Shown piece by piece: positions 5,922-62,596 of a stretch of DNA of 64,000 bases. Within the stretch, counting starts at the first letter, position 1, and each line of letters begins with the position of its first letter. Both the position numbers and the translations under genes were made by a program. This DNA is from Ascidiella aspersa (lineage: Eukaryota), in contig OZ004614.1 in NCBI GenBank assembly GCA_963924565.1, positions 7,130,001 through 7,194,000 on the forward strand, read 5' to 3'. The notes below the pieces were generated by a model, which was given only the letters and a program-made list of their open reading frames with translations, made no database searches and was not told where the DNA came from.

Positions 5922-5996
5922 AGCCTGCAGTGAGGTTCGAACCCACGACCTCCGGTCATAGCGGGACCGTCGTTCTACCAACTGAGCTACACAGGC
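5922..5996 (-). pseudogene. tRNA-like sequence (tRNA pseudogene or SINE head)
   Basis: Minus strand GCCTGTG TA GCTC AGTTGGTA GAAC GA CGGTC CCGCTAT GACCG GAGGTC GTGGG TTCGAAC CTCAC TGCAGGC T: A and B boxes, cloverleaf and a T5 run just downstream, but C33, a D-stem mismatch and a GCT anticodon without the Ser long variable arm. Confidence 0.75.
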
Positions 5997-17905: not shown

Positions 17906-18260
17906 GCTTGTAAATCAATTGCAAAGCTAAAAAGGTCAGGTAGATATAAGACGTTTTAATACTAGCTTGTATTATCTTCAGTTAATGTGACTGAGAAATA
18001 AATCAAGCTTTACTTATAAAAGGTGGACGCAAGTTTTATCATTTCGAGTTTATATAGTCGGATCTTTAATTAGCCTCTTCAAGGTGTTCAAAAGGTACAG
18101 CGGTGTTGATAAGGCGTCAAGGTTTAATAACTGAAGATAATACAAGCTTGTATCGAAACGTCTTAATCAAGATGATGTCGACCTACTCGAAATTTTTGGC
18201 TTTGTAATTCATGATCAAGCTACATTACATGTCCGTGCATAGTGCAACCAGGTATTATTT
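17906..18260. mobile_element. Inverted pair of family-A hammerhead units in an EXT1 intron
   Basis: + core CTGAAGA at 18131 followed by the same downstream sequence as 60555-60650; inverted copy 17906-17985. Confidence 0.65.
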
Positions 18261-18413: not shown

Positions 18414-18575
18414 TTTGGAGCATAATGGTTGGAGGTTGTAGTAAGACGTAACAGGAATATCAAAGCCCATACAGAAGTAGGTAGCATTTCAAACGTTTCG
18501 AATAACCCTTCGTTGTAAATGAAGAAAGAGTTTTTCAAAACGTTGAAAATGATACCTACTTCTATATGGGCTTTG
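18414..18575. repeat. Fold-back repeat family (copies at ~12500-12670, ~40230-40420, ~55185-55300)
   Basis: Internal inverted repeat aagcccatacagaagtaggtagcattt / aaatgatacctacttctatatgggctt; shared ttggagcataatggttggaggttgtagtaa segment. Confidence 0.6.
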
Positions 18576-21939: not shown

Positions 21940-24024
21940 GTAAACGATTTTCCATATTGGCTGTACTTCGCAAGATCTTGTTTGCTTTTACTATGTGCCT
22001 TAAGAGTGAAACCGATTTATTTAATTCCGGGTTAGCCAACACGTCGATCGCGATCGACCGGTCGGTCGACAAATTTTACCTGGTCGATCGCGTCGAATAT
22101 GTGTTACGTCATTACAGTAGCTGTCGCGCACAAGCGGAACATTAAAATGACCATTTGCTGTCTGGACAAGCCTAATACGCGTTCTTTGACGAAACAAATT
22201 AACCTTTATCGCTGGCTTGGAATGCAATTAACGCTCAAAATGTTGAATAAGTGTTCTTGTGACATTTTTCGACCGAACCAGTCGATCGCGAGTCTCTAGA
22301 AATATTTTAGTCCATTTCAATTTAACAAACACCTTTGTTGCAGCTCAGACCATTCAACCAGTGGTTTTCAAAGTGGCACATGCTCCCCAAACGGTTGGGC
22401 ATAGAAAAATTATAAAAAAAAATGGCGGGCATGTTGGTTTCTGTACTGGCACAGAGCAGAAACATATTTTTTGTAACATTTAGTAGTTATGTGTCCTAAT
22501 TGTTTTGAGGACAAAAGTAGGACCTGATTTCTGTGGAACCTGTGCTGTAAATTACCACCTAAATAAGCACTCGTATTTCTCTATTTAAACCTCCACAAGG
22601 CACAATCTGTGGCTGTTGCTAGTTGTATTAAAAAACAGGGAAAAGATGAATTATAGGTTGTATGGCGAACCTATTACGACATTTTAGGTTTCGGAAAAAA
22701 ATAGCCTTAACTTTAATTTTACCACACGTTTGCGTTTTAGTTTATTGACCAACTATTATCTACCCCGGCATAGAAACCAGCTTCTATTTTTCCCAGAGGT
22801 ACAAAACAACGTCACAAACGCAAAATAAAAAACTACGATGCAAAACAGGGTTGAACAAGTAAAAAAAAAACGATTAGCACATCGTTCCAACGAATAACAG
22901 ATCAGCCCGAAGCCTACAAAAGCGCTTGATTTAGGTCTCACGTGTCGTTTTTTTATTAGAGCTGAACTGAATGAAATGAAAAACCACAATGTTATATTTG
23001 CAAGGAACATACGCGACGTGTGTCGTAAAATTTAACTCCACAGTGGTGACAAGGGTTCTGTTGGTTGTCCAATATTGACGTTTCTTGGCTGACTTCCCTT
23101 CCCATGCGCCAGATCGACCTTCTGACGTCAACATTGCGGCGTCATTAAATTTCATGTCATTTTCTTTTTTCTGGTCCGACATGTTATATCAGACTGTTTA
23201 TTCATTACATTGGCAACAGCTACCAATCCATTTTTACTCCCTCTCGTTAGTTATTCCTGGCTGTTTTTCCTAATGTTAGAAATCTAGATCATATCTAATA
23301 AAAACACGTTACGTAAAGAATCAAGTCACTTTTAAATTTTTATTCAATATATGCTACAACATTACCCGAAAAAATATATTTAAAACTTTTTTAAATTGAT
23401 TTTTTCAGTTGTAAATCCAACGTAGATTGTGATTCTGTACATCAGACTTTTAAAGCGATTAAAACACAATGCAGATATAGCGGCGGTCTAAAGTCCTAAA
23501 CGAAGCGAATCCATTACAGTCACCGCCATATATTTTACCCTATAATTGTTTCAAGTACTTCGCCCAATACCACGTCACCTCACTTTGGCGGGAAACAGCT
23601 TGTCGCGGCTATGTAGGCCAATATTTGGGGAGTTGTGTAATTGTGGCGGTGTTGAGTGGATTATGGAAACCCTCGAGAGAGCTGAAGTATCTTGGTTAAA
23701 CATTATCCCTCATTCAGGCGAATTGCACGTGGCAGTGATGTACAGCGAATACCATCTCCCGCCGGGGTTGTTTCAATTTTGAAAACCTTTTTAATGTTTT
23801 ACGAAGTGGCTATGGGTAATAATAGCATACTATAGAGGCCTTCGGGAGGGCTTATCGAAACCAATCGGTCTTACAAGTCACTGAGGGTGTAGATCCTTAA
23901 TATAAATGTTGTATAACAAATGATTTAGTCGCCGTCAATTGAGAAACCTTAAGCTTTTGTGATTTATTACGTTGGTTCCCTAAGTAAAACCAAACTGATA
24001 AATGAAAGTTACTGTAATATTTGG

Positions 24025-24204
24025 TCAGCTTTTGCACAACCGTGCTTCATCAGGTCAAAGTATGACCTTCATCAGTAGAAACTTTGACCTGATGAAGCAC
24101 GGTTGTACGAAAGCTTGTCGAGAATCCAATACTATTTGTCTTTATATAGTGCCACCTGATTCCTCTATTTAGAATTAGACTAATACGGCCATATACAAAG
24201 ATTA
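24025..24204. mobile_element. Inverted hammerhead pair, family B, in an EXT1 intron
   Basis: + copy 24083-24122: tttgac CTGATGA A GCAC ggtt GTAC GAAA GC TT gtcgag; inverted copy 24025-24060; flanks taatatttgg (24015-24024) and taatattttgg (24205-24215). Confidence 0.7.
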
Positions 24205-25294
24205 TAATATTTTGGAAAATTATTTTTGAGCGGTTGTTTATGACATTTGTGCTGTAAAAAGAAAGCTGACAGTTTTTAACATTAGTAACACGATTTCAGA
24301 CCCAAAAAATCCCAATATAGTTGTGTATTTCGTTGTTTCCTTCAAGCTCGCAATTTTATTTGGTTTGTTATGAGAGCCCTACAAGCTTGCAGGACGAGTG
24401 AGAATCGGTCGATATAATCCTACCAGCCAGACCATAACATGACATGAGCGGTAACGGCGCCATTAGCGGGCCACAGTCGCCCTCAAGAATGCTCTTCCAA
24501 CTCGACCGTTCATACACAATACGCATGTTGGAAGTTTGGACGTGACTCTAGTGAACTTACCACAACCCACAACAACGACGCACCTTTTAAAAGTAAAACA
24601 CGCGATCTTTTTAAAACACAGATCGAAATAGGCCTTTGCAATACGCCCGCCATAGTTCACAGTCCGCGAATCGCAGCCGATACCCGATGCCAAGTTGTAG
24701 TGTCTGTACTCGTCCGATACCAAATTAACATTGGAATTTCAGCCTTGGTTTGCCAAGCTGCGGCTTTTATCTTGAAACACAAATTTATCCTAGGTTAACA
24801 ACTATAGAGGTAACTAACTTAATAACAGAAATTTTTGACATATTGAGTTGGAAAAAATTACCTTTAAAAGATTTTTTTTAGCCTATCAATGACGTCATTA
24901 GGTGTCGGATTAGATTTTATCGCAAAACTTTTTATTAGATTTTATCGCAAAACTTTTTTTTTTTAAGTATCGGACATCCCTAGCTCGCAGTATTTCTTTT
25001 CACCTTGCCATCCGTTTCTCAGGCCGCGCCGTAATTTTGCGAAGGCGTTGTCCAATAAAGCGGCCACGTAAAAGTGGCGCCAACAGCCGAGGAAAAGTTT
25101 GCCGCTCCAATAATGGACTTGCCGCTTCCCCGTTGACACGTTAACGACCATACGCTAGCTCTACGTGACCGCAACGGGTTCTATCGCACGTCGTCTTTGT
25201 CATAACACGCTTGCCCCGGCCTTAGCGACTTGTGGGCGTTTGCTCGTAAAATTTTCGCCTTTGTTTATTTTTAGCTTTATTTCAAAAATTTTTT

Positions 25295-40000: not shown

Positions 40001-40479
40001 ACCCACGCAACAGTCGGAACAGCTGGACGCCTGGTGAGTTAACATTCAAATTTGATTCGGAGATTACGCGCCTAATTTGACTTCCGCCAGATGTCAGATT
40101 TAAGTAAAAATAGCTTCATGCTCTGTTTGGCCTAATTTTACCCAGTGACCTGCAGAATCACTTATCTCTAGTAGCATCTTTGCTGTACATTCAACCGCTT
40201 ATCAAACCGAAAGTGCAAATTTATGTGTATTTTGGAGCATAATGGTTGGAGGTTGTAGTAACAATATCAAACCCCATACAGAAGTCTAGGGAAACATTTT
40301 GAACGTTTCGAATAAATCTTTGTTCATTTTCAACATCGTTTGTATTTTATTTGTGAGTTGTCAAAAAAGTAGCCTAATCCAGTGTTATCAGGTGTTTTTG
40401 AAAATGATAACTTGAAAATCCGTGCCGAATCAGGGTGACTTGGCTTTGCGTCATGCCATCGCATTCCATCAAAAATATA

Positions 40480-55100: not shown

Positions 55101-55906
55101 TAGGCATTTGAAGCGATCAACAACAGCCCGACTTAGCTTAAATTTGTCTGCTGGGACGCAACCTTGTCGCCTACACACGCGAATTTCAACGTTGAAAATG
55201 AATAAAGAGTTATTCAAAACGTTCAAAATGATTATCACTTCGGTATGAGCTTTGAAATTCTTATTACGTCTTACTACAACCTCCAACCCTTTGCTCCAAT
55301 GTAAAGCCAATAGTTTGCTGTGCATTTAATGCCCGATCACCTTTTCGATTTCCGTTCAACTTGAAACGAAAACATACAGCAACATCAACATCCTAATGTT
55401 CTTTTGTCGTTGTTAACAAAAACATTGAACGAATGGAAAAAATCCTCTTGGTGGTATTTTTACTTAACCTTGATCTCAGTTATAAACAATATACTGCAGG
55501 CAATTGTGAAGAAACACTGATAAATAAATCCCTGGTTTAAAGATGCACCATATATTATGTGGAATATACTGATATTAAACGCATTTAAAGGCTTCAAGTT
55601 GGAAAGCAAATCATAAAGCAGCTCCGTATTGGGAGCAAAATCCTTAACAGTTGGATTAGATGTCCTACATTAAAGAAATAATGGTTTGGGGGTATTTATG
55701 TAGTGGTAAATAAAAAAAAGCAAACTTCACGGTACTTTTATTAAACCAAAATCACACCATTTATTTAAAAGATTTAGCCGGCACTAACGAACTAGAAGTT
55801 TTATTAATAAATGATTGGGCTTTTAGCTTTTATATAAACTCATATGTCAACCAGAAGTGGTGTTCCTCCGACCAGGACTTGCTGGCAACGCAAGCCTGGC
55901 AAACTT

Positions 55907-58234: not shown

Positions 58235-59821
58235 GTTAAGTCTCGTGTTAAGCTGACAAACAAAGCAAAATGATCGCAATACAAACAACATAGTGTGGAC
58301 GAAATTTATGTTTATTCACTTTAATTTATTTCGTAATCGCTCTTCATGATTTATTCAATTGGTTTATTTGTCTTGTCGGATTAAGTTTGTTTGTTCGCTA
58401 GCTCTTTATTTCAACAATATTTGAAATGTTAATTGCAGAATGTCAGGCCGGCGGGTCAAATATGGACTATATTATGGACCAGCGAATGATTAAAAAAGTA
58501 CGTGATTTTTAAAATACGTGATTTTTGTTCAGCGATTAAAGTGTCGAGATGATATTAGCGCTAATATTTTTATATGCCCAATGCACCATTAGGGTAAACG
58601 CTTGCCCAACTGAAACTAAATAATCGCAATTTTTGAGCTTTGCGCGATTAAAGTTTTGGTTCCACAATTGCACACCAGTTGTATTGCAAACAACAAGTTT
58701 AAGATTATACTTGAATTATTGCGTAACTGTGACGTCATATGTGTCCCAAAACTAAAATTCGAATAGGCAATTTCAAATTTGGCCCGCCATATGAAACGCA
58801 TTGCATCTGTGGCCCGCTTCAAAATATGGTTTGGATCGCGCTAGTTTATTGTAAATGAAAAAAAAACTTTGTATCCTATCTTAGTTTCAGTCCCACTATT
58901 TATTCCCTTTTCTTCGTAATTTGCGATATCCCACTTTGTGCAAAAGTATTGACGAACTGCCGAAACTGCCCCGCGGTTTCGTCTTGGTTTTGGCGCGAAA
59001 ACGAACGAATTCGAAAAACGGGAGAACAAAAACTTAGAAATGACGAAAAAAAAAGCAACATCAAACGCGGCAAAAAATCACGAGGCGAACGCGTGCTTTT
59101 CACCGAAGCTCGTTTGTTGGCTTGGCCCGGTTATAGGCAGCACATATCGCGCTCGAATCTGTGGGCGGCGCCGTGTCTTCTTAGTTCGGACTTCAATATC
59201 CGCGCCCGCCGCAAAAAGGCCAAGTTCTGGGCGCGAACTCGCAACGCTAAACATGCGGGAGGTTGTCGTACCGACGCGCGAGCTCGCCGTTTCTGTCGCT
59301 TTGGCCGCACGAGCTGAAGTTTAGTTTTTTTTTTTAGGAGAGAGTTGATCTATCGCGATATCGCCATGTAAACAGTAAGCCTTCATTATTAACAAAGAGC
59401 CCAAATAAAGAACGGAAATGTCATATACTTCTATTACCATAGATTAGTGTTGTAATGGGTTAGTCGCACTTTAAACACTGTTTTCGAATAGCTTAACTTG
59501 ACCTTGGACTTATACGTCAAATAACTTATTATAATTATTTTATTTCATTTAAAAGCGTAAATAATTTGCTTAGTATTGGTTTCGTTATTGTTGTTTGCTT
59601 TGCGAAATACTGCTCGAAATTGATGCAATTTTACAAATTTCTTGAATTGGACTTTTACACATTGTTTACAACAAGGACGCTTTACATAAAACCTCGTCTG
59701 GCGAAACTCCATGCAGACTGCGCGTCCCTTATATTGGAACTTAGCGTTGCGCAAATTGCTAAACCAGCAACAAAGCCCGAGCATTTTTTTGGGAAACAAC
59801 GCATCGACTTATAAAACACAT

Positions 59822-60043
59822 ATTTAAAACAACAGGTTCCTCTGGCAATATATATTATTTTCCACCAACGTTTCGGCTTACTATCCGGCAAGCCTTCGTC
59901 AGGGACTGACACACAAAGCCAACAAAACGCAGTCCCTGACGAAGGTTTGCCGGATAGTAAGCCAAAACGTTGGTAGAAAATAATATATATTGCCAGAGGA
60001 ACCTGTTTTAAATATACTATGCCTGGTAGCAACAGCATATTTA
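59822..60043. mobile_element. Palindromic hammerhead-containing insertion, family C (inverted pLTR-like)
   Basis: ~87-bp inverted arms (59821-59908 / 59930-60014), each with CTGACGA-A-GG(C/T)TTGC cggata GTAAGCC-(G/A)AAA-CG-TT; 13-bp direct repeat ttataaaacacat at 59809-59821 and 60044-60056. Confidence 0.75.
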
Positions 60044-60518
60044 TTATAAAACACATGTCTGAAAGCTAAGATTTAGCAGATGGGCATTAAAATACAGCAT
60101 AACAATCTGGAATAACTGGGACTGGGTTTCAACAGAGTCATGTTCACTTGCAGGAAAGGTGTTTATTTTATTATTCTTAGTGGGGGTCAGGAGTTACGAA
60201 CCGGACAGATTTGATCATACTGGGGAACATGCTTAAATTCGGGACGGGTTCGGCGTACCATAGCAGTAAATAACAAAACGCGCAACAAAACAATAAACAG
60301 TTCAATAGGGTTGCGGATTTATCTGCCACAATACCAAATAACATAGCGAAAAACACCGAATTCTAAAAGTACAATAAAAATACCAAATACCGAAAGTACA
60401 ATAAAATGCACAATACCGAAGCATGGATTCAAAGCGTAGGTAATAGTCCCTTCTTGCTGCTTCGTTTGCATGAAATGGCGAGTTAAAGCTAAAAGAAAAT
60501 CTGTCAACTATATTTTGT

Positions 60519-60558
60519 TTAACTGAAGATGATACAAGCTCGTATCGAAACGTCTTAA
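60519..60558 (+). ncRNA. Minimal type-I hammerhead ribozyme motif
   Basis: Stem I UUAA/UUAA, CUGAAGA, extra U, 5-bp stem II, GAAA, palindromic ACGU stem III, GUC cleavage triplet (cut after 60554). Confidence 0.7.
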
Positions 60559-60778
60559 TAATCAAGATGATGTCGATCTACTCAACCTTTTTAGCTTTGC
60601 AATTTATTATCAAGCTACATTACAGATCCGTGCACAGTGTACCCAAGTATATTGGTATCTATTACGGTAAAGCATTTAAATTAACTGAAGATGATACAAG
60701 CTCGTATCGAAACGTCTTAGTAATCTAGATCGTGTCGATCTACTCGACCTGTGGACTTTGTAATTTATTATCAAGCTA
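60521..60778 (+). mobile_element. Hammerhead-containing retrozyme/Penelope-like insertion, family A (1.6 tandem units of ~162 nt)
   Basis: Two cores CTGAAGA-T-GATAC aagctc GTATC-GAAA-CG-TC at 60523 and 60685; direct repeat ctatattttgttt at 60508-60520 and 60776-60788. Confidence 0.75.
60680..60721 (+). ncRNA. Minimal type-I hammerhead ribozyme motif (second tandem copy)
   Basis: Same core as at 60523; stem I AUUAA/UUAGU; predicted cut after 60716. Confidence 0.7.
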
Positions 60779-61825
60779 TATTTTGTTTGATTTTTAAATT
60801 TCAACAGTTTAAAAAAAAGTGAAAATTTCGATGGAAATAAAAACCAAGTTAAACTATAATCAAGTTTTTTTGAAAGCTTATCACAGGCTTCAGCGCTCGC
60901 AATTTGCGACTTGGCAATTTCCCACGCATTGCGACTTATAGCGTTGCTTAAATTCCGATTAAAACCAGCAAGACGTTGCTCGCAATTTACAGCGAAACGC
61001 GGCTGGTCACATTTAAAAAAGGAGAGCGCCGCCGGTGGCGACTTGAAAAGGCGTAAACAAAGTCGTCTCAAGGTTAATCGCTCGGCGCTCGGCCGCGTGT
61101 GTCTTAGCGCTTTGCCGCGTAAAGACAACAATGGCGGGCACACGGCACCCGCTGCACATTCACATCGACTTGTCAAAACCAGCGGCTACGACGAGCCTGT
61201 TGCTGATAATGTTGCTACTGTTGTTGTTGTCTTTGAAAGACGCAGTCCTTTGGCCGTTTCTATAAAAAATACATGTCCCGGCGTTGGTAAAGCTATAGCT
61301 TACATAAACCCCCCGGAGAAAGTAGAATTGTTTTGTTTATAACGTGTGCCATACTTCTTCTTTTCCAGACGTTGTTAAATAACTTTATCATAGAAGCGAG
61401 TCTTTCGGTTTTTAACCGAACCTTTTAAGCATTTGTAACTCTTGACTATTTCACCATAATTATGTGCAAACAGGCAGGACTCTTTAACAGTGGCTTTTTT
61501 TATTTTCCACCCGTTTTTTTATTTCACGTGATCTCCCTAAAAAGTCATCGCTTAATGCTCCAATACTCCTAACATAACCACTCGGTCTACTCTACACTTG
61601 TTTATTACCTGTTTATCTCGATAGAGCACGATTTGTCGTGCAAAGCTTGCCGGAGATATAAGCCTGATAGACCAAAACAACGCGGGAATTTGGTTGCAAG
61701 TCGTGATAAAATACTTCTGTTTTTAAAGATGTTAGGATCGCAACTAAGAAAATTGGCATTTTTTATTTACGCTAACGCACGCTATATATAGTTAGTTAAT
61801 GAATTGCAAAAAAAGATCTACATCA

Positions 61826-61945
61826 TTACAAGCTAGTATCGAAAACGTCTTAATCAAGATGATGTCGATCTTGGCGACCTTTTTGGATTTGCAATTCATT
61901 ACCAAGCTTCATTACTAATCCGTGCATTGTGTACCCAAATATATA
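61826..61945 (+). repeat. 5'-truncated family-A unit
   Basis: tacaagctagtatcgaaaacgtcttaatcaagatgatgtcgatc...ccgtgcattgtgtacccaa matches 60533-60650; CUGA box missing. Confidence 0.6.
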
Positions 61946-62596
61946 GTTAGTAATTTCATGTTCCCCCTTACGTTAACACCAGCACATTCCCACATTCACG
62001 TTGCTGTTTCGTGTTTAGGGCCGCGTTTTACGACGTCACCCGCCCAACGTTTAACTTAACCAAGTGCCGTGCGGCTATAAACAGTTCAGCCGAACGTTTG
62101 CCGACCGTGCTACGTCACAACAACGTGGCGTGACGTCACAAAAATGAGTGTGAACGCGGGAAGGTGTCAGTAGACCAACTTAAGTGGAGAAGCGGCCGCG
62201 TTTCCACAAAAATACACCGCTGTGTGTCTTGTGTGGGGTAACCACTTAATTATCGCTTCAGTGTGATGTTGAAGCGAACCAATCGACTTGGCCGAACAGG
62301 CAGTTGCCGCTAATTTAGGAGCGTTTTGTTTGCCGGCGTATACAGCCACGACCTATATCGAGCGCTCGTTCGCCTCGTCTATTCCAGTAGATCGAAGTTG
62401 CGAGACGCTTTGCCATCAGAGAGACAGTGGGCTGCCCAGGAGCGTGTTTGCTTTAACGGCTTTATCAAGAGCGCCTAGCGTGCGTCATCAGTTGATAAGC
62501 ACCCGGCCAAGAATGCCGCGCATTTTACGAGTTCACCAGCACCGTCTACAGCATTCTGATAAAACCGTAAAAAGGTGCCACGAAACGTGCACACAC

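What the first reader, a model, noticed from the sequence alone, without database searches (positions are those of the whole stretch)
60508..60788. Retrozyme-like element: 1.6 tandem units, two intact minimal hammerhead ribozymes and a target-site duplication
Seen: two identical cores, CUGAAGA-U-GAUAC(aagcuc)GUAUC-GAAA-CG-UC, 162 nt apart, each with a 4-5 bp stem I, and a 13-bp direct repeat (ctatattttgttt) flanking the insertion. Known: Penelope-like elements and metazoan non-LTR retrozymes carry minimal type-I hammerheads whose loopless palindromic stem III forms as a dimer. Inference: cleavage after 60554 and 60716 would release a 162-nt non-coding monomer able to circularise. A longer-than-unit copy with a TSD is what reverse transcription around a circular RNA would leave. 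This may be an undescribed small circRNA mobile family in this lineage.
Basis: partly seen in the sequence, partly recalled or inferred. Interest (0 to 1): 0.9.

Follow-up and report, generated by a model that had tools for sequence, protein, structure and literature searches.

The report
Truncated Penelope retrotransposon end with hammerheads
The two hammerhead motifs are real, but they sit in a dead, gene-less double end-fragment of an abundant Penelope-like retrotransposon, a kind of ribozyme-bearing remnant described in 2014, so the finding is correct in outline and ordinary.

Summary
Two identical 32-nt hammerhead cores lie 162 nt apart (60523-60554, 60685-60716). A 13-nt direct repeat flanks the roughly 255-258-bp insertion.

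The unit is not a new small non-coding circRNA family. It is the end piece of a Penelope-like element (PLE): a minimal hammerhead, a 12-nt leader and the first 38 codons of the PLE reading frame. Longer copies of the same family run upstream through a 3'UTR into a reverse-transcriptase + GIY-YIG endonuclease frame. Sister PLE families in this genome with intact 816-880-aa frames carry the same ribozyme layout, with compensatory changes in stems I and II and a C3:G8 to U3:A8 swap.

The family shows the PLE hallmarks:
- heavy 5' truncation;
- 3' ends in two peaks 30 nt apart (the 'tail');
- 10-13-bp target duplications;
- frequent head-to-head dimers.

Head-to-tail short dimers like this one are rare: 1 locus with exact cores against 19 head-to-head, plus 4 older loci sharing the junction.

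One RNA-seq run shows no expression of this locus, no strand bias and no read ends at the predicted cleavage site. The motif matches the PLE 'min-HHR' of Cervera & de la Peña 2014 feature by feature. Other agents of this scan reached the same verdict on other DNA of this genome. Low interest.

The parts
60508..60520 (+). Left copy of the target-site duplication (ctatattttgttt)
   Evidence: Family-wide duplications of 10-13 bp.
60521..60680 (+). Unit 1: a 5'-truncated PLE end fragment. It runs from the first base of stem I/hammerhead to +114 of the PLE frame, which is the long 'tail' form.
   Evidence: It is 91-98% identical to other family copies.
60523..60554 (+). Minimal hammerhead 1. C3-A9 is CUGAAGA, followed by an unpaired U. 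Helix II is GAUAC/GUAUC with loop AAGCUC. Then G12-A14 GAA, A15.1-C15.2-G16.2-U16.1 (ACGU palindrome) and C17. Predicted cleavage is after 60554.
   Evidence: 58.3 bits, E 9e-11 with model R1.
60567..60680 (+). Remnant of the PLE reading-frame start (38 codons, MMSIYSTFLALQFIIKLHYRSVHSVPKYIGIYYGKAF). It matches the N-termini of the intact 880-aa and 843-aa PLE frames of sister families.
60681..60778 (+). Unit 2: a second 5'-truncated copy. It starts at the same point and ends at the short 3'-end class (about +50 of the frame). It is 90% identical to unit 1.
60685..60716 (+). Minimal hammerhead 2, identical to hammerhead 1. Predicted cleavage is after 60716.
   Evidence: 58.1 bits.
60776..60788 (+). 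Right copy of the target-site duplication. Its first 3 bases (cta) may equally belong to the element.

Best explanation
The feature is a dead-on-arrival insertion made in one event by the RT/GIY-YIG protein of a Penelope-like element (PLE).

Shown:
- Each 162-nt unit is the terminal piece of that PLE: about 2 nt of stem I, a minimal type-I hammerhead, a 12-nt leader and the first 38 codons of the element's frame.
- Longer copies continue upstream through about 95 nt of 3'UTR into the RT-endonuclease frame.
- Family 3' ends fall into classes 30 nt apart inside the frame's start.
- 5' ends are variably truncated.
- Duplications are 10-13 bp.

Inferred:
- The endonuclease made a 13-bp staggered cut in AT-rich DNA.
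- cDNA synthesis began at an internal site of the RNA, about +50 of the frame. This is the internal initiation shown in vitro for the Anolis PLE.
- Synthesis ran through the hammerhead to the RNA's preferred 5' end just upstream of it.
- It then continued on a second template, or a second repeat of a multimeric or circular template, from the +114 site through the hammerhead again.
- The result is 1.6 head-to-tail units.

The hammerheads belong to the PLE life cycle. There the motif is thought to process multimeric transcripts, acting as a dimer through the ACGU palindrome. In this fragment they have no demonstrated role. The copy lacks the frame and the sequence downstream of the initiation sites, and it is not detectably transcribed.
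For: Link to the PLE frame:
- Family copies extend more than 1 kb upstream of the hammerhead.
- In L051 a 202-aa frame with VVY...YIGQTRRN...H...E...N (GIY-YIG) motifs stops about 95 nt before the hammerhead.
- In L077 a 433-aa open frame just upstream hits RVT_1 at E 1.2e-7.
- The frame's C-terminus is 53% identical to that of an intact 880-aa PLE frame. That frame hits PF01541 GIY-YIG at 25.4 bits, above the 22.6-bit cut-off.

Sister families:
- Families with 816-880-aa frames have the same hammerhead layout before the frame start and after its stop. One of them forms three tandem units of 2671 bp.
- The peptide encoded after the window's hammerhead aligns with the N-termini of those frames.

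Insertion signatures:
- 3' ends are bimodal: 24 copies at +90-99 and 33 at +120-129 from the hammerhead start. This matches the optional 30-40-bp 'tail' and internal RT start sites of PMC11167929.
- Target duplications are 10-13 bp, also around head-to-head dimers.

Ribozyme:
- Cross-family covariation gives 90% of cells paired against 63% in shuffles and 16-41% in slid controls. Eight of 10 pairs have changes on both sides, including C3:G8 to U3:A8.
- The motif matches the published PLE min-HHR in every listed feature.

Abundance:
- 2307 first-look candidates, 224 exact cores and 150 of 150 scored model hits.
Against: - No full-length family-A copy with an intact frame and both flanking repeats was recovered. 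All close copies are broken or truncated, so the link between frame start and frame body rests on sister families.
- The same tail-to-hammerhead junction recurs at 4 other, more diverged loci. That could mean descent from a short-unit master rather than repeated formation.
- Unit 2 is further from all 57 other copies than unit 1 (median 86.6% against 92.7%). This fits two templates but is not explained with certainty.
- Self-cleavage was not tested. Published PLE min-HHRs cleave poorly in vitro.
Confidence: 0.85

Rival explanations
1. One reading: a separate non-autonomous 'retrozyme' lineage with a unit of about 162 nt. Its transcripts self-cleave at the two hammerheads and circularise. The circles are then copied more than once around by a PLE reverse transcriptase, leaving 1.6 units plus a duplication.
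For: - A head-to-tail dimer with a duplication is what this model predicts.
- The same junction is seen at L054, L056, L060 and L063, which share variants such as ggtataacatt.
- A circular template for more-than-unit copies is proposed in PMC4209133.
- A 2026 preprint derives animal retrozymes from PLE terminal repeats.
Against: - Only 1 locus has two exact cores at this spacing, against 224 exact cores and 19 head-to-head pairs.
- No array longer than 2 units was seen.
- The junction joins the family's two preferred ends, so it can form repeatedly.
- The units differ by 10% and are unequally distant from the family.
- The monomer is not more structured than shuffles (z +0.49).
- RNA reads track DNA copy number, are equal on both strands and show no ends at 60554/60555.
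- The hammerhead is the minimal PLE type, not the canonical retrozyme type.
Confidence: 0.08
2. A single PLE end fragment inserted first. Part of it was later duplicated locally, by replication slippage or unequal exchange, to give 1.6 units.
For: The units have diverged by 10%, so the arrangement is old. Tandem duplications are common in AT-rich DNA.
Against: - The unit boundary coincides exactly with the family's preferred 5' end and a recurrent long-tail 3' end.
- The same junction occurs at other loci.
- A slippage event would not be expected to hit those two points.
- The duplication flanks the whole composite.
Confidence: 0.04
3. A MITE or foldback DNA transposon family that happens to contain a hammerhead-like motif.
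For: Many family loci are near-palindromic head-to-head pairs with duplications. Superficially they look like MITEs.
Against: - The inner ends of the arms are variably truncated and the outer ends are the PLE 3'-end classes.
- The arms continue into an RT/GIY-YIG frame in longer copies.
- Duplication length varies from 10 to 13 bp.
- The window copy is direct, not inverted.
Confidence: 0.01

Closest known systems
Minimal hammerheads (min-HHR) in the terminal repeats of metazoan Penelope-like elements (Cervera & de la Peña 2014, PMC4209133)
   Same: - CUGANGA / GAAA / UH core.
- An unpaired base between A9 and 10.1.
- A G10.1-C11.1 pair.
- No helix III or loop 3, with a palindromic 15.2-16.2 (ACGU), so the motif must act as a dimer.
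- A helix I of 4-5 bp without a defined loop 1.
- Thousands of mostly solitary motifs in truncated PLEs, with pairs on opposite strands 100-700 bp apart.
- A U3:A8 core variant in a sister family.
   Different: Helix II is 5 bp here, against the 7-8 bp typical of the Schistosoma families (6 bp in D. virilis).
Poseidon PLE of Anolis carolinensis (PAc): internal initiation of reverse transcription and the 'tail' signature (Frangieh et al. 2024, PMC11167929)
   Same: - The hammerhead lies at the junction of terminal repeat and frame start.
- Genomic copies end inside the first roughly 50-115 nt of the frame.
- The 3' ends fall into discrete classes about 30 nt apart.
- Targets are AT-rich.
- Both DNA strands are extended in vitro, which would give the head-to-head dimers seen here.
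   Different: In PAc the frame starts at helix II and the cut site is 26 nt inside the frame. Here the first ATG lies 12 nt after the cut site (9 nt in the commoner family form that lacks the AAU triplet). Three end classes are seen here (about +50, +80, +114), against two adjacent start sites in vitro. Nothing was tested biochemically here.
Metazoan non-LTR retrozymes (Cervera & de la Peña 2020, PMC7229834; Li, Clavereau & Pollet 2026 preprint, 10.64898/2026.07.22.740005)
   Same: Short AT-rich head-to-tail repeat units, each with a type-I hammerhead. Duplications are longer than 4 bp. The likely mobilising enzyme is a PLE, and the sequence is related to PLE terminal repeats.
   Different: - Retrozymes have canonical hammerheads with loop 1-loop 2 contacts.
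- Their arrays reach tens of units.
- They give abundant, highly self-paired 170-400-nt circular RNAs.
- Here the hammerhead is the minimal variant and there are only 1.6 units.
- Here there is no excess structure and no RNA signal, and the unit carries the start of the PLE frame.

Membership tests
PLE minimal hammerhead (min-HHR, PMC4209133) | Conserved catalytic boxes CUGANGA ... GAAA ... U-H in type-I order | tested here: met
   CUGAAGA, GAAA and GUC are present in both units.
PLE minimal hammerhead (min-HHR, PMC4209133) | [quoted passage not shown] | tested here: met
   a U follows A9, and helix II opens with G-C. The same layout is seen in five further hammerhead variants of the genome (B, B2, C, D and E).
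PLE minimal hammerhead (min-HHR, PMC4209133) | No helix III or loop 3; palindromic 15.2-16.2 that allows a dimeric helix III | tested here: met
   A15.1-C-G-U16.1 reads ACGU.
PLE minimal hammerhead (min-HHR, PMC4209133) | Helices supported by compensatory changes between families of one genome | tested here: met
   on a gap-free alignment of 7 sequences from 3 families. 90% of cells are paired, against 63% in shuffles. Four of 5 helix II pairs, 3 of 4 helix I pairs and C3:G8/U3:A8 change on both sides. Only 3 independent families were available.
PLE minimal hammerhead (min-HHR, PMC4209133) | Located in the terminal repeat of an RT + GIY-YIG element | tested here: met
   the same motif lies about 95 nt after the frame's stop in L051 and L077. 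In sister families it stands both before and after intact frames.
PLE minimal hammerhead (min-HHR, PMC4209133) | Self-cleavage (as a dimer, or assisted by protein) | not testable with these tools
   The RNA-seq run shows no excess of read ends at 60554/60555. A standard library is a poor test for this.
Penelope-like element, endonuclease-positive | Single frame with a reverse transcriptase followed by a C-terminal GIY-YIG endonuclease | tested here: met
   This holds for the family, not for the window copy. RVT_1 hits at E 1e-7 to 1e-9. GIY-YIG scores 25.4 bits in a sister frame that is 53% identical to the family's C-terminus. The window copy has no such frame.
Penelope-like element, endonuclease-positive | Insertions as partial tandems or inverted pairs, 5' truncation, an optional 30-40-bp 'tail' at the 3' end, and variable duplications | tested here: met
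Metazoan non-LTR retrozyme (PMC7229834) | Canonical type-I hammerhead with helix I / helix II loop contacts | tested here: not met
   helix I is 4-5 bp with no loop 1. Rfam Hammerhead_1 gives no match.
Metazoan non-LTR retrozyme (PMC7229834) | Short head-to-tail repeats (about 150-450 bp), from dimers to large multimers, at many loci | tested here: inconclusive
   There are 1.6 units of 162 bp here. Five or six other two-unit loci exist and none is longer. The search is limited to what could be fetched.
Metazoan non-LTR retrozyme (PMC7229834) | Abundant linear and circular RNA of unit length, highly self-paired | tested here: not met
   Folding gives z +0.49 against shuffles. In the single RNA-seq run the depth follows DNA copy number, both strands are equal, there are no back-joints, and the locus flanks are silent. 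Only 6% of the run was read and small RNAs are under-sampled, so the RNA part is weak evidence.
Rfam Hammerhead_1 (RF00163) | Score at or above the 34-bit gathering threshold | tested here: not met
   no match even at E 10 locally or E 1 genome-wide. This is expected, because the model requires helix III.

The most novel reading that the evidence does not exclude
The short head-to-tail dimers (this locus plus L054, L056, L060, L063) might be the first steps of a retrozyme being born from a PLE terminal repeat. On this reading a 162-nt unit, made only of a minimal hammerhead and the RT-recognition/initiation region, already propagates on its own through unit-length or circular RNA. A circle of the 162 nt from 60555 to 60716 would also be one endless 54-codon reading frame.
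Probability: 0.07. Interest if true: 0.45.

Novelty: new member of a known kind. Interest (0 to 1): 0.15.

Why it matters
It matters little on its own. It is one of thousands of dead Penelope-like end fragments in this genome.

It does give a clean in-genome illustration of two published points. The first is the feature set of the PLE minimal hammerhead. The second is the 'tail' / internal-initiation signature seen in vitro for an Anolis PLE, here as 3' ends in discrete classes inside the frame's start.

It also carries a practical lesson. Rfam's hammerhead models are blind to this abundant class, so annotation pipelines will miss it. Short inverted pairs of it can be mistaken for MITEs.

Tried and rejected
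- Rfam scans of the window at gathering score and of 60400-60900 at E 10 gave no hammerhead. RF00163 over the whole genome also gave no match. I took this as model blindness, not absence.
- The first MAFFT alignment of all hammerhead families misplaced the two with longer or shorter helix II (A1). I counted pairs only on the gap-free set (A2), so families D and E are not in the statistics.
- Pfam on the family's own 202-aa C-terminal frame gave no GIY-YIG hit, even at E 10. The assignment rests on a sister frame, the alignment and the visible motifs. The ESM Atlas look-alikes (GIY-YIG / HTH_animal clusters) are a lead only.
- Within-family site diversity showed no special conservation of the ribozyme: 0.036 in the core against 0.034-0.060 in the adjoining frame start. 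The sample was chosen by similarity to the query, so this says nothing either way.
- I looked for a full-length family-A copy with an intact frame. The best open frames are 622 aa or less and broken.
The 150 model hits could not be fetched, and no wider census of arrays or families was possible.
- The SINE reading (a sharp 5' end at -179) was an artefact of the query's own truncation.
- The MITE reading was rejected (see rivals).
- An empty-site allele was not found. Both haplotype contigs of the DNA run cross the left junction (records 2 and 3).

Full report
OBSERVATION

The sequence shows the motif CTGAAGA-T-GATAC-aagctc-GTATC-GAAA-CG-TC at 60523-60554 and, identically, at 60685-60716. The spacing is 162 nt (repeat D1: 77 nt, 90% identical).

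In hammerhead numbering the motif reads as follows:
- C3-A9 is CUGAAGA, followed by one unpaired U.
- Helix II has 5 bp opening with G10.1-C11.1, with a 6-nt loop.
- Then come G12-A13-A14, A15.1-C15.2-G16.2-U16.1 (the palindrome ACGU, with no loop 3) and C17.
- Helix I is UUAA/UUAA (4 bp) for unit 1. For unit 2 it is 5 bp with one G.U.

The 13-mer ctatattttgttt stands at 60508-60520 and 60776-60788. Its right-hand 'cta' also fits the element (caagCTAcatt in other copies), so the duplication is 10-13 bp.

A simple descriptor scan finds three such motifs in the window, against 0.03 per shuffled window.

Rfam finds no hammerhead at gathering score or at E up to 10 in 60400-60900. RF00163 has no match in the whole genome. 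This reflects the model, which expects a helix III.

WHAT THE UNIT IS

The window is G000:C8:7130001-7194000 of a 308.6-Mb genome. The 162-nt unit is a high-copy repeat, with 2307 first-look candidates and 58 scored matches at 81-97% identity. The exact 32-nt core occurs 224 times, against 0 for the reversed control.

Aligning 30 loci showed three things:
- a block of about 126-133 nt shared from the hammerhead onward;
- variable left ends;
- many loci with a second, inverted, 5'-truncated copy head-to-head.

Walking upstream showed that longer copies continue for more than 1 kb. In L051 a 202-aa frame ends about 95 nt before the hammerhead and carries GIY-YIG motifs: VVYKLSCSCGASYIGQTRRN...H...LLESLSI...ELNVD. 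In L077 the 433-aa open frame immediately upstream hits RVT_1 at E 1.2e-7.

A protein search of the genome with the 202-aa piece gave 151 matches. These include other PLE families at 43-57% identity with open frames of 816-880 aa, and three units spaced 2671 bp apart. Those intact frames hit RVT_1 (E 1e-9) and GIY-YIG. The C-terminal 202 aa of the 880-aa frame reaches 25.4 bits against PF01541, above the 22.6-bit cut-off, and is 53% identical to the family's own C-terminus. The family is therefore an endonuclease-positive Penelope-like element.

THE PIECE AFTER THE HAMMERHEAD IS THE START OF THE PLE FRAME

From ATG 60567, which lies 12 nt after the predicted cut, the window reads MMSIYSTFLALQFIIKLHYRSVHSVPKYIGIYYGKAF. 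The intact sister frames begin ...MNLLSIIWATLFLLKIINRSVFSVPKYVGNHYG (880 aa) and ...MIPTSVWALIFLLRLTTTSNHYAPKFIVSHYGEK (843 aa). In both, this start comes directly after their own hammerheads.

The 'non-coding monomer' is therefore hammerhead + leader + the first 38 codons of the element.

PLE INSERTION SIGNATURES

I measured 77 copies against a natural copy used as a ruler.
- 3' ends: 24 copies end 90-99 nt and 33 copies end 120-129 nt after the start of the hammerhead. Ten more end at 130-139, and a few end further on.
- From the ATG these classes lie at about +50, +80 and, rarely, +114.
- Unit 2 of the window ends in the first class. Unit 1 ends at +114.
- 5' starts are scattered, which is truncation. 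However, 25 of 77 lie within -10..+4 of the hammerhead.

The 3'-end pattern is the 'tail' signature. For the Anolis PLE, reverse transcription starts in vitro at two adjacent internal sites 111-118 nt into the frame. The optional 30-40-bp genomic tail is the stretch between them (PMC11167929).

Direct repeats of 9 nt or more flank 14 of 48 insertions, against 0.7% of mismatched flank pairs. The lengths run up to 13 nt, four times exactly 13. They flank whole head-to-head composites as well. Two other insertions in the window also have 13-nt duplications.

THE RIBOZYME MOTIF

The published description of metazoan PLE min-HHRs (PMC4209133) lists these features:
- a conserved G10.1-C11.1 pair;
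- palindromic 15.2-16.2 without loop 3;
- consensus families full of compensatory changes;
- a U3:A8 core variant;
- thousands of mostly single motifs in truncated PLEs, with pairs on opposite strands.

Every sequence feature is met here. Six hammerhead variants of this genome share the layout with different helix II sequences:
- GAUAC/GUAUC (this family)
- GGCAA/UUGCC
- GGCA/UGCC
- GAAUAA/UUAUUC, with core UUGAAAA
- GGCUUGC/GUAAGCC
- GCAC/GUGU

I counted pairs on a gap-free alignment of 7 sequences from 3 families:
- 90% of cells pair, against 63% in shuffles and 16-41% when partners are slid.
- Eight of 10 pairs change on both sides, including C3:G8 to U3:A8.

A covariance model built from that alignment (R1) matched 150 of 150 scored candidates in the genome and eight places in the window. 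Within the family, the ribozyme is no more conserved than its neighbours, as expected for dead copies. Self-cleavage was not tested. Published min-HHRs cleave weakly, as dimers, or with protein help.

IS THERE A 162-NT RETROZYME LINEAGE?

For:
- The same tail-to-hammerhead junction is present at four other, more diverged loci: L054, L056, L060 and L063.
- Two further loci (L006, L062) have longer junctions.

Against:
- The junction simply joins the family's preferred 5' end to a recurrent 3' end, so it can form again and again.
- With exact 13-nt cores there is 1 head-to-tail locus at this spacing, against 19 head-to-head loci.
- No array exceeds two units.
- The two window units differ at 10 positions, all after the ribozyme. 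Unit 2 is further than unit 1 from all 57 other copies, with median identity 86.6% against 92.7%. That does not fit one template copied 1.6 times, unless later mutation was uneven.
- The 162-nt monomer folds no better than shuffles: -23.1 kcal/mol, z +0.49. Retrozyme circles are described as highly self-paired (PMC7229834).
- That paper also reserves canonical hammerheads for retrozymes and minimal ones for PLEs.

RNA AND DNA READS

One RNA-seq run of the same species was available, with raw reads, and about 6% of it was read.
- 623 reads at 90% identity or more were laid on 60300-61000.
- 96% of them run on into unlike sequence, so they come from other copies.
- The single-copy flanks at 60348-60491 and 60780-61000 have no reads.
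- Both orientations are equally represented.
- Depth follows the DNA depth of the family.
- No place shows an excess of read starts or ends, and no back-joint is supported.

This is weak negative evidence. Small, non-polyadenylated or cyclic-phosphate-ended RNAs are under-sampled in such a library.

In the DNA run, two haplotype contigs (depths 47 and 56, summing to the single-copy depth) both cross the left junction. No empty-site allele is seen in that individual.

MECHANISM

Shown: the anatomy, the link to the RT/GIY-YIG frame, the end classes, the duplications and the covariation.

Inferred:
- One target-primed event at a 13-bp staggered cut in AT-rich DNA.
- Internal initiation at about +50.
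- Copying through the hammerhead to the RNA's 5' end just upstream of it.
- Continuation on a second template, or on a second repeat of a multimeric or circular RNA, from +114.

The much commoner head-to-head dimers fit priming from both DNA ends, as seen in vitro for the Anolis element. A circular template cannot produce them.

NOVELTY AND VERDICT

The kind is known: min-HHRs since 2014, the tail and internal initiation since 2024, and the derivation of retrozymes from PLE repeats in a 2026 preprint.

Other agents of this scan reached the same verdict for other hammerhead families on other DNA of this genome. I arrived at the reading independently, before seeing those notes.

This locus is an ordinary new member of that kind. 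Interest is low.

The only composite sequence was a ruler that joined stretches of two natural copies (L026, L006) for coordinates and was never printed.

Noticed in passing
window 61784-61951: A third family-A insertion. It is a + copy truncated inside the hammerhead (about 61826-61937, ending at gtgtaccc). A decayed inverted remnant precedes it. The 13-mer atatatagttagt flanks it at 61784-61796 and 61939-61951.
   Followed up: partly
window 59809-60056: A head-to-head pair of a different hammerhead family (CUGACGA-A-GGCUUGC...GUAAGCC-GAAACGUU, intact on the minus strand at 59902-59867). The 13-mer ttataaaacacat flanks it at 59809-59821 and 60044-60056.
   Followed up: partly
window 17944-17987 (-), 18125-18168 (+), 18486-18549, 40296-40339 (-), 55186-55229 (+): Further min-HHR hits of model R1. 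They comprise another family-A head-to-head pair and several copies of the U3:A8-core family (UUGAAAA). That makes at least eight hammerhead motifs in 64 kb.
   Followed up: no
window 24015-24215: A palindromic repeat with a decayed hammerhead of yet another family (CTGATGA-A-GCAC...GAAAGCTT, helix III palindrome AGCU). A better copy of this family is at L059:2995-3022 (-).
   Followed up: no
L078, L079, L080 and window 60555-60569: In three PLE families the first ATG after the predicted hammerhead cut, 4-13 nt downstream, opens the conserved N-terminus of the RT frame. Cleavage would therefore leave an mRNA with an almost leaderless start.
   Followed up: partly
window 60555-60716: The 162 nt between the two predicted cuts is 54 codons without a stop in the PLE frame, so a circle of it would be an endless reading frame. 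In unit 2 the same frame is closed by TAG at 60725-60727.
   Followed up: no
family-A copies: 25 of 77 copies begin within -10..+4 of the hammerhead start, not at the predicted cleavage site. This is a preferred 5' end of unknown cause. It could be a transcription start, a reverse-transcriptase stop, or a template-jump point.
   Followed up: partly
window 60328-60420: An imperfect 27-nt direct repeat (aaaa[at]acc[ag]aat...agtacaat) lies just upstream of the insertion (families D2 and D4).
   Followed up: no
window 5922-5996 (-): The only Rfam match at gathering score in the window is a tRNA (38.3 bits), with extra bases in the anticodon-loop region.
   Followed up: no
L077:5893-6040: In this copy the PLE end fragment runs into a frame with a DYFSRF-type motif. 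This is possibly an integrase of another retroelement into which it inserted.
   Followed up: no
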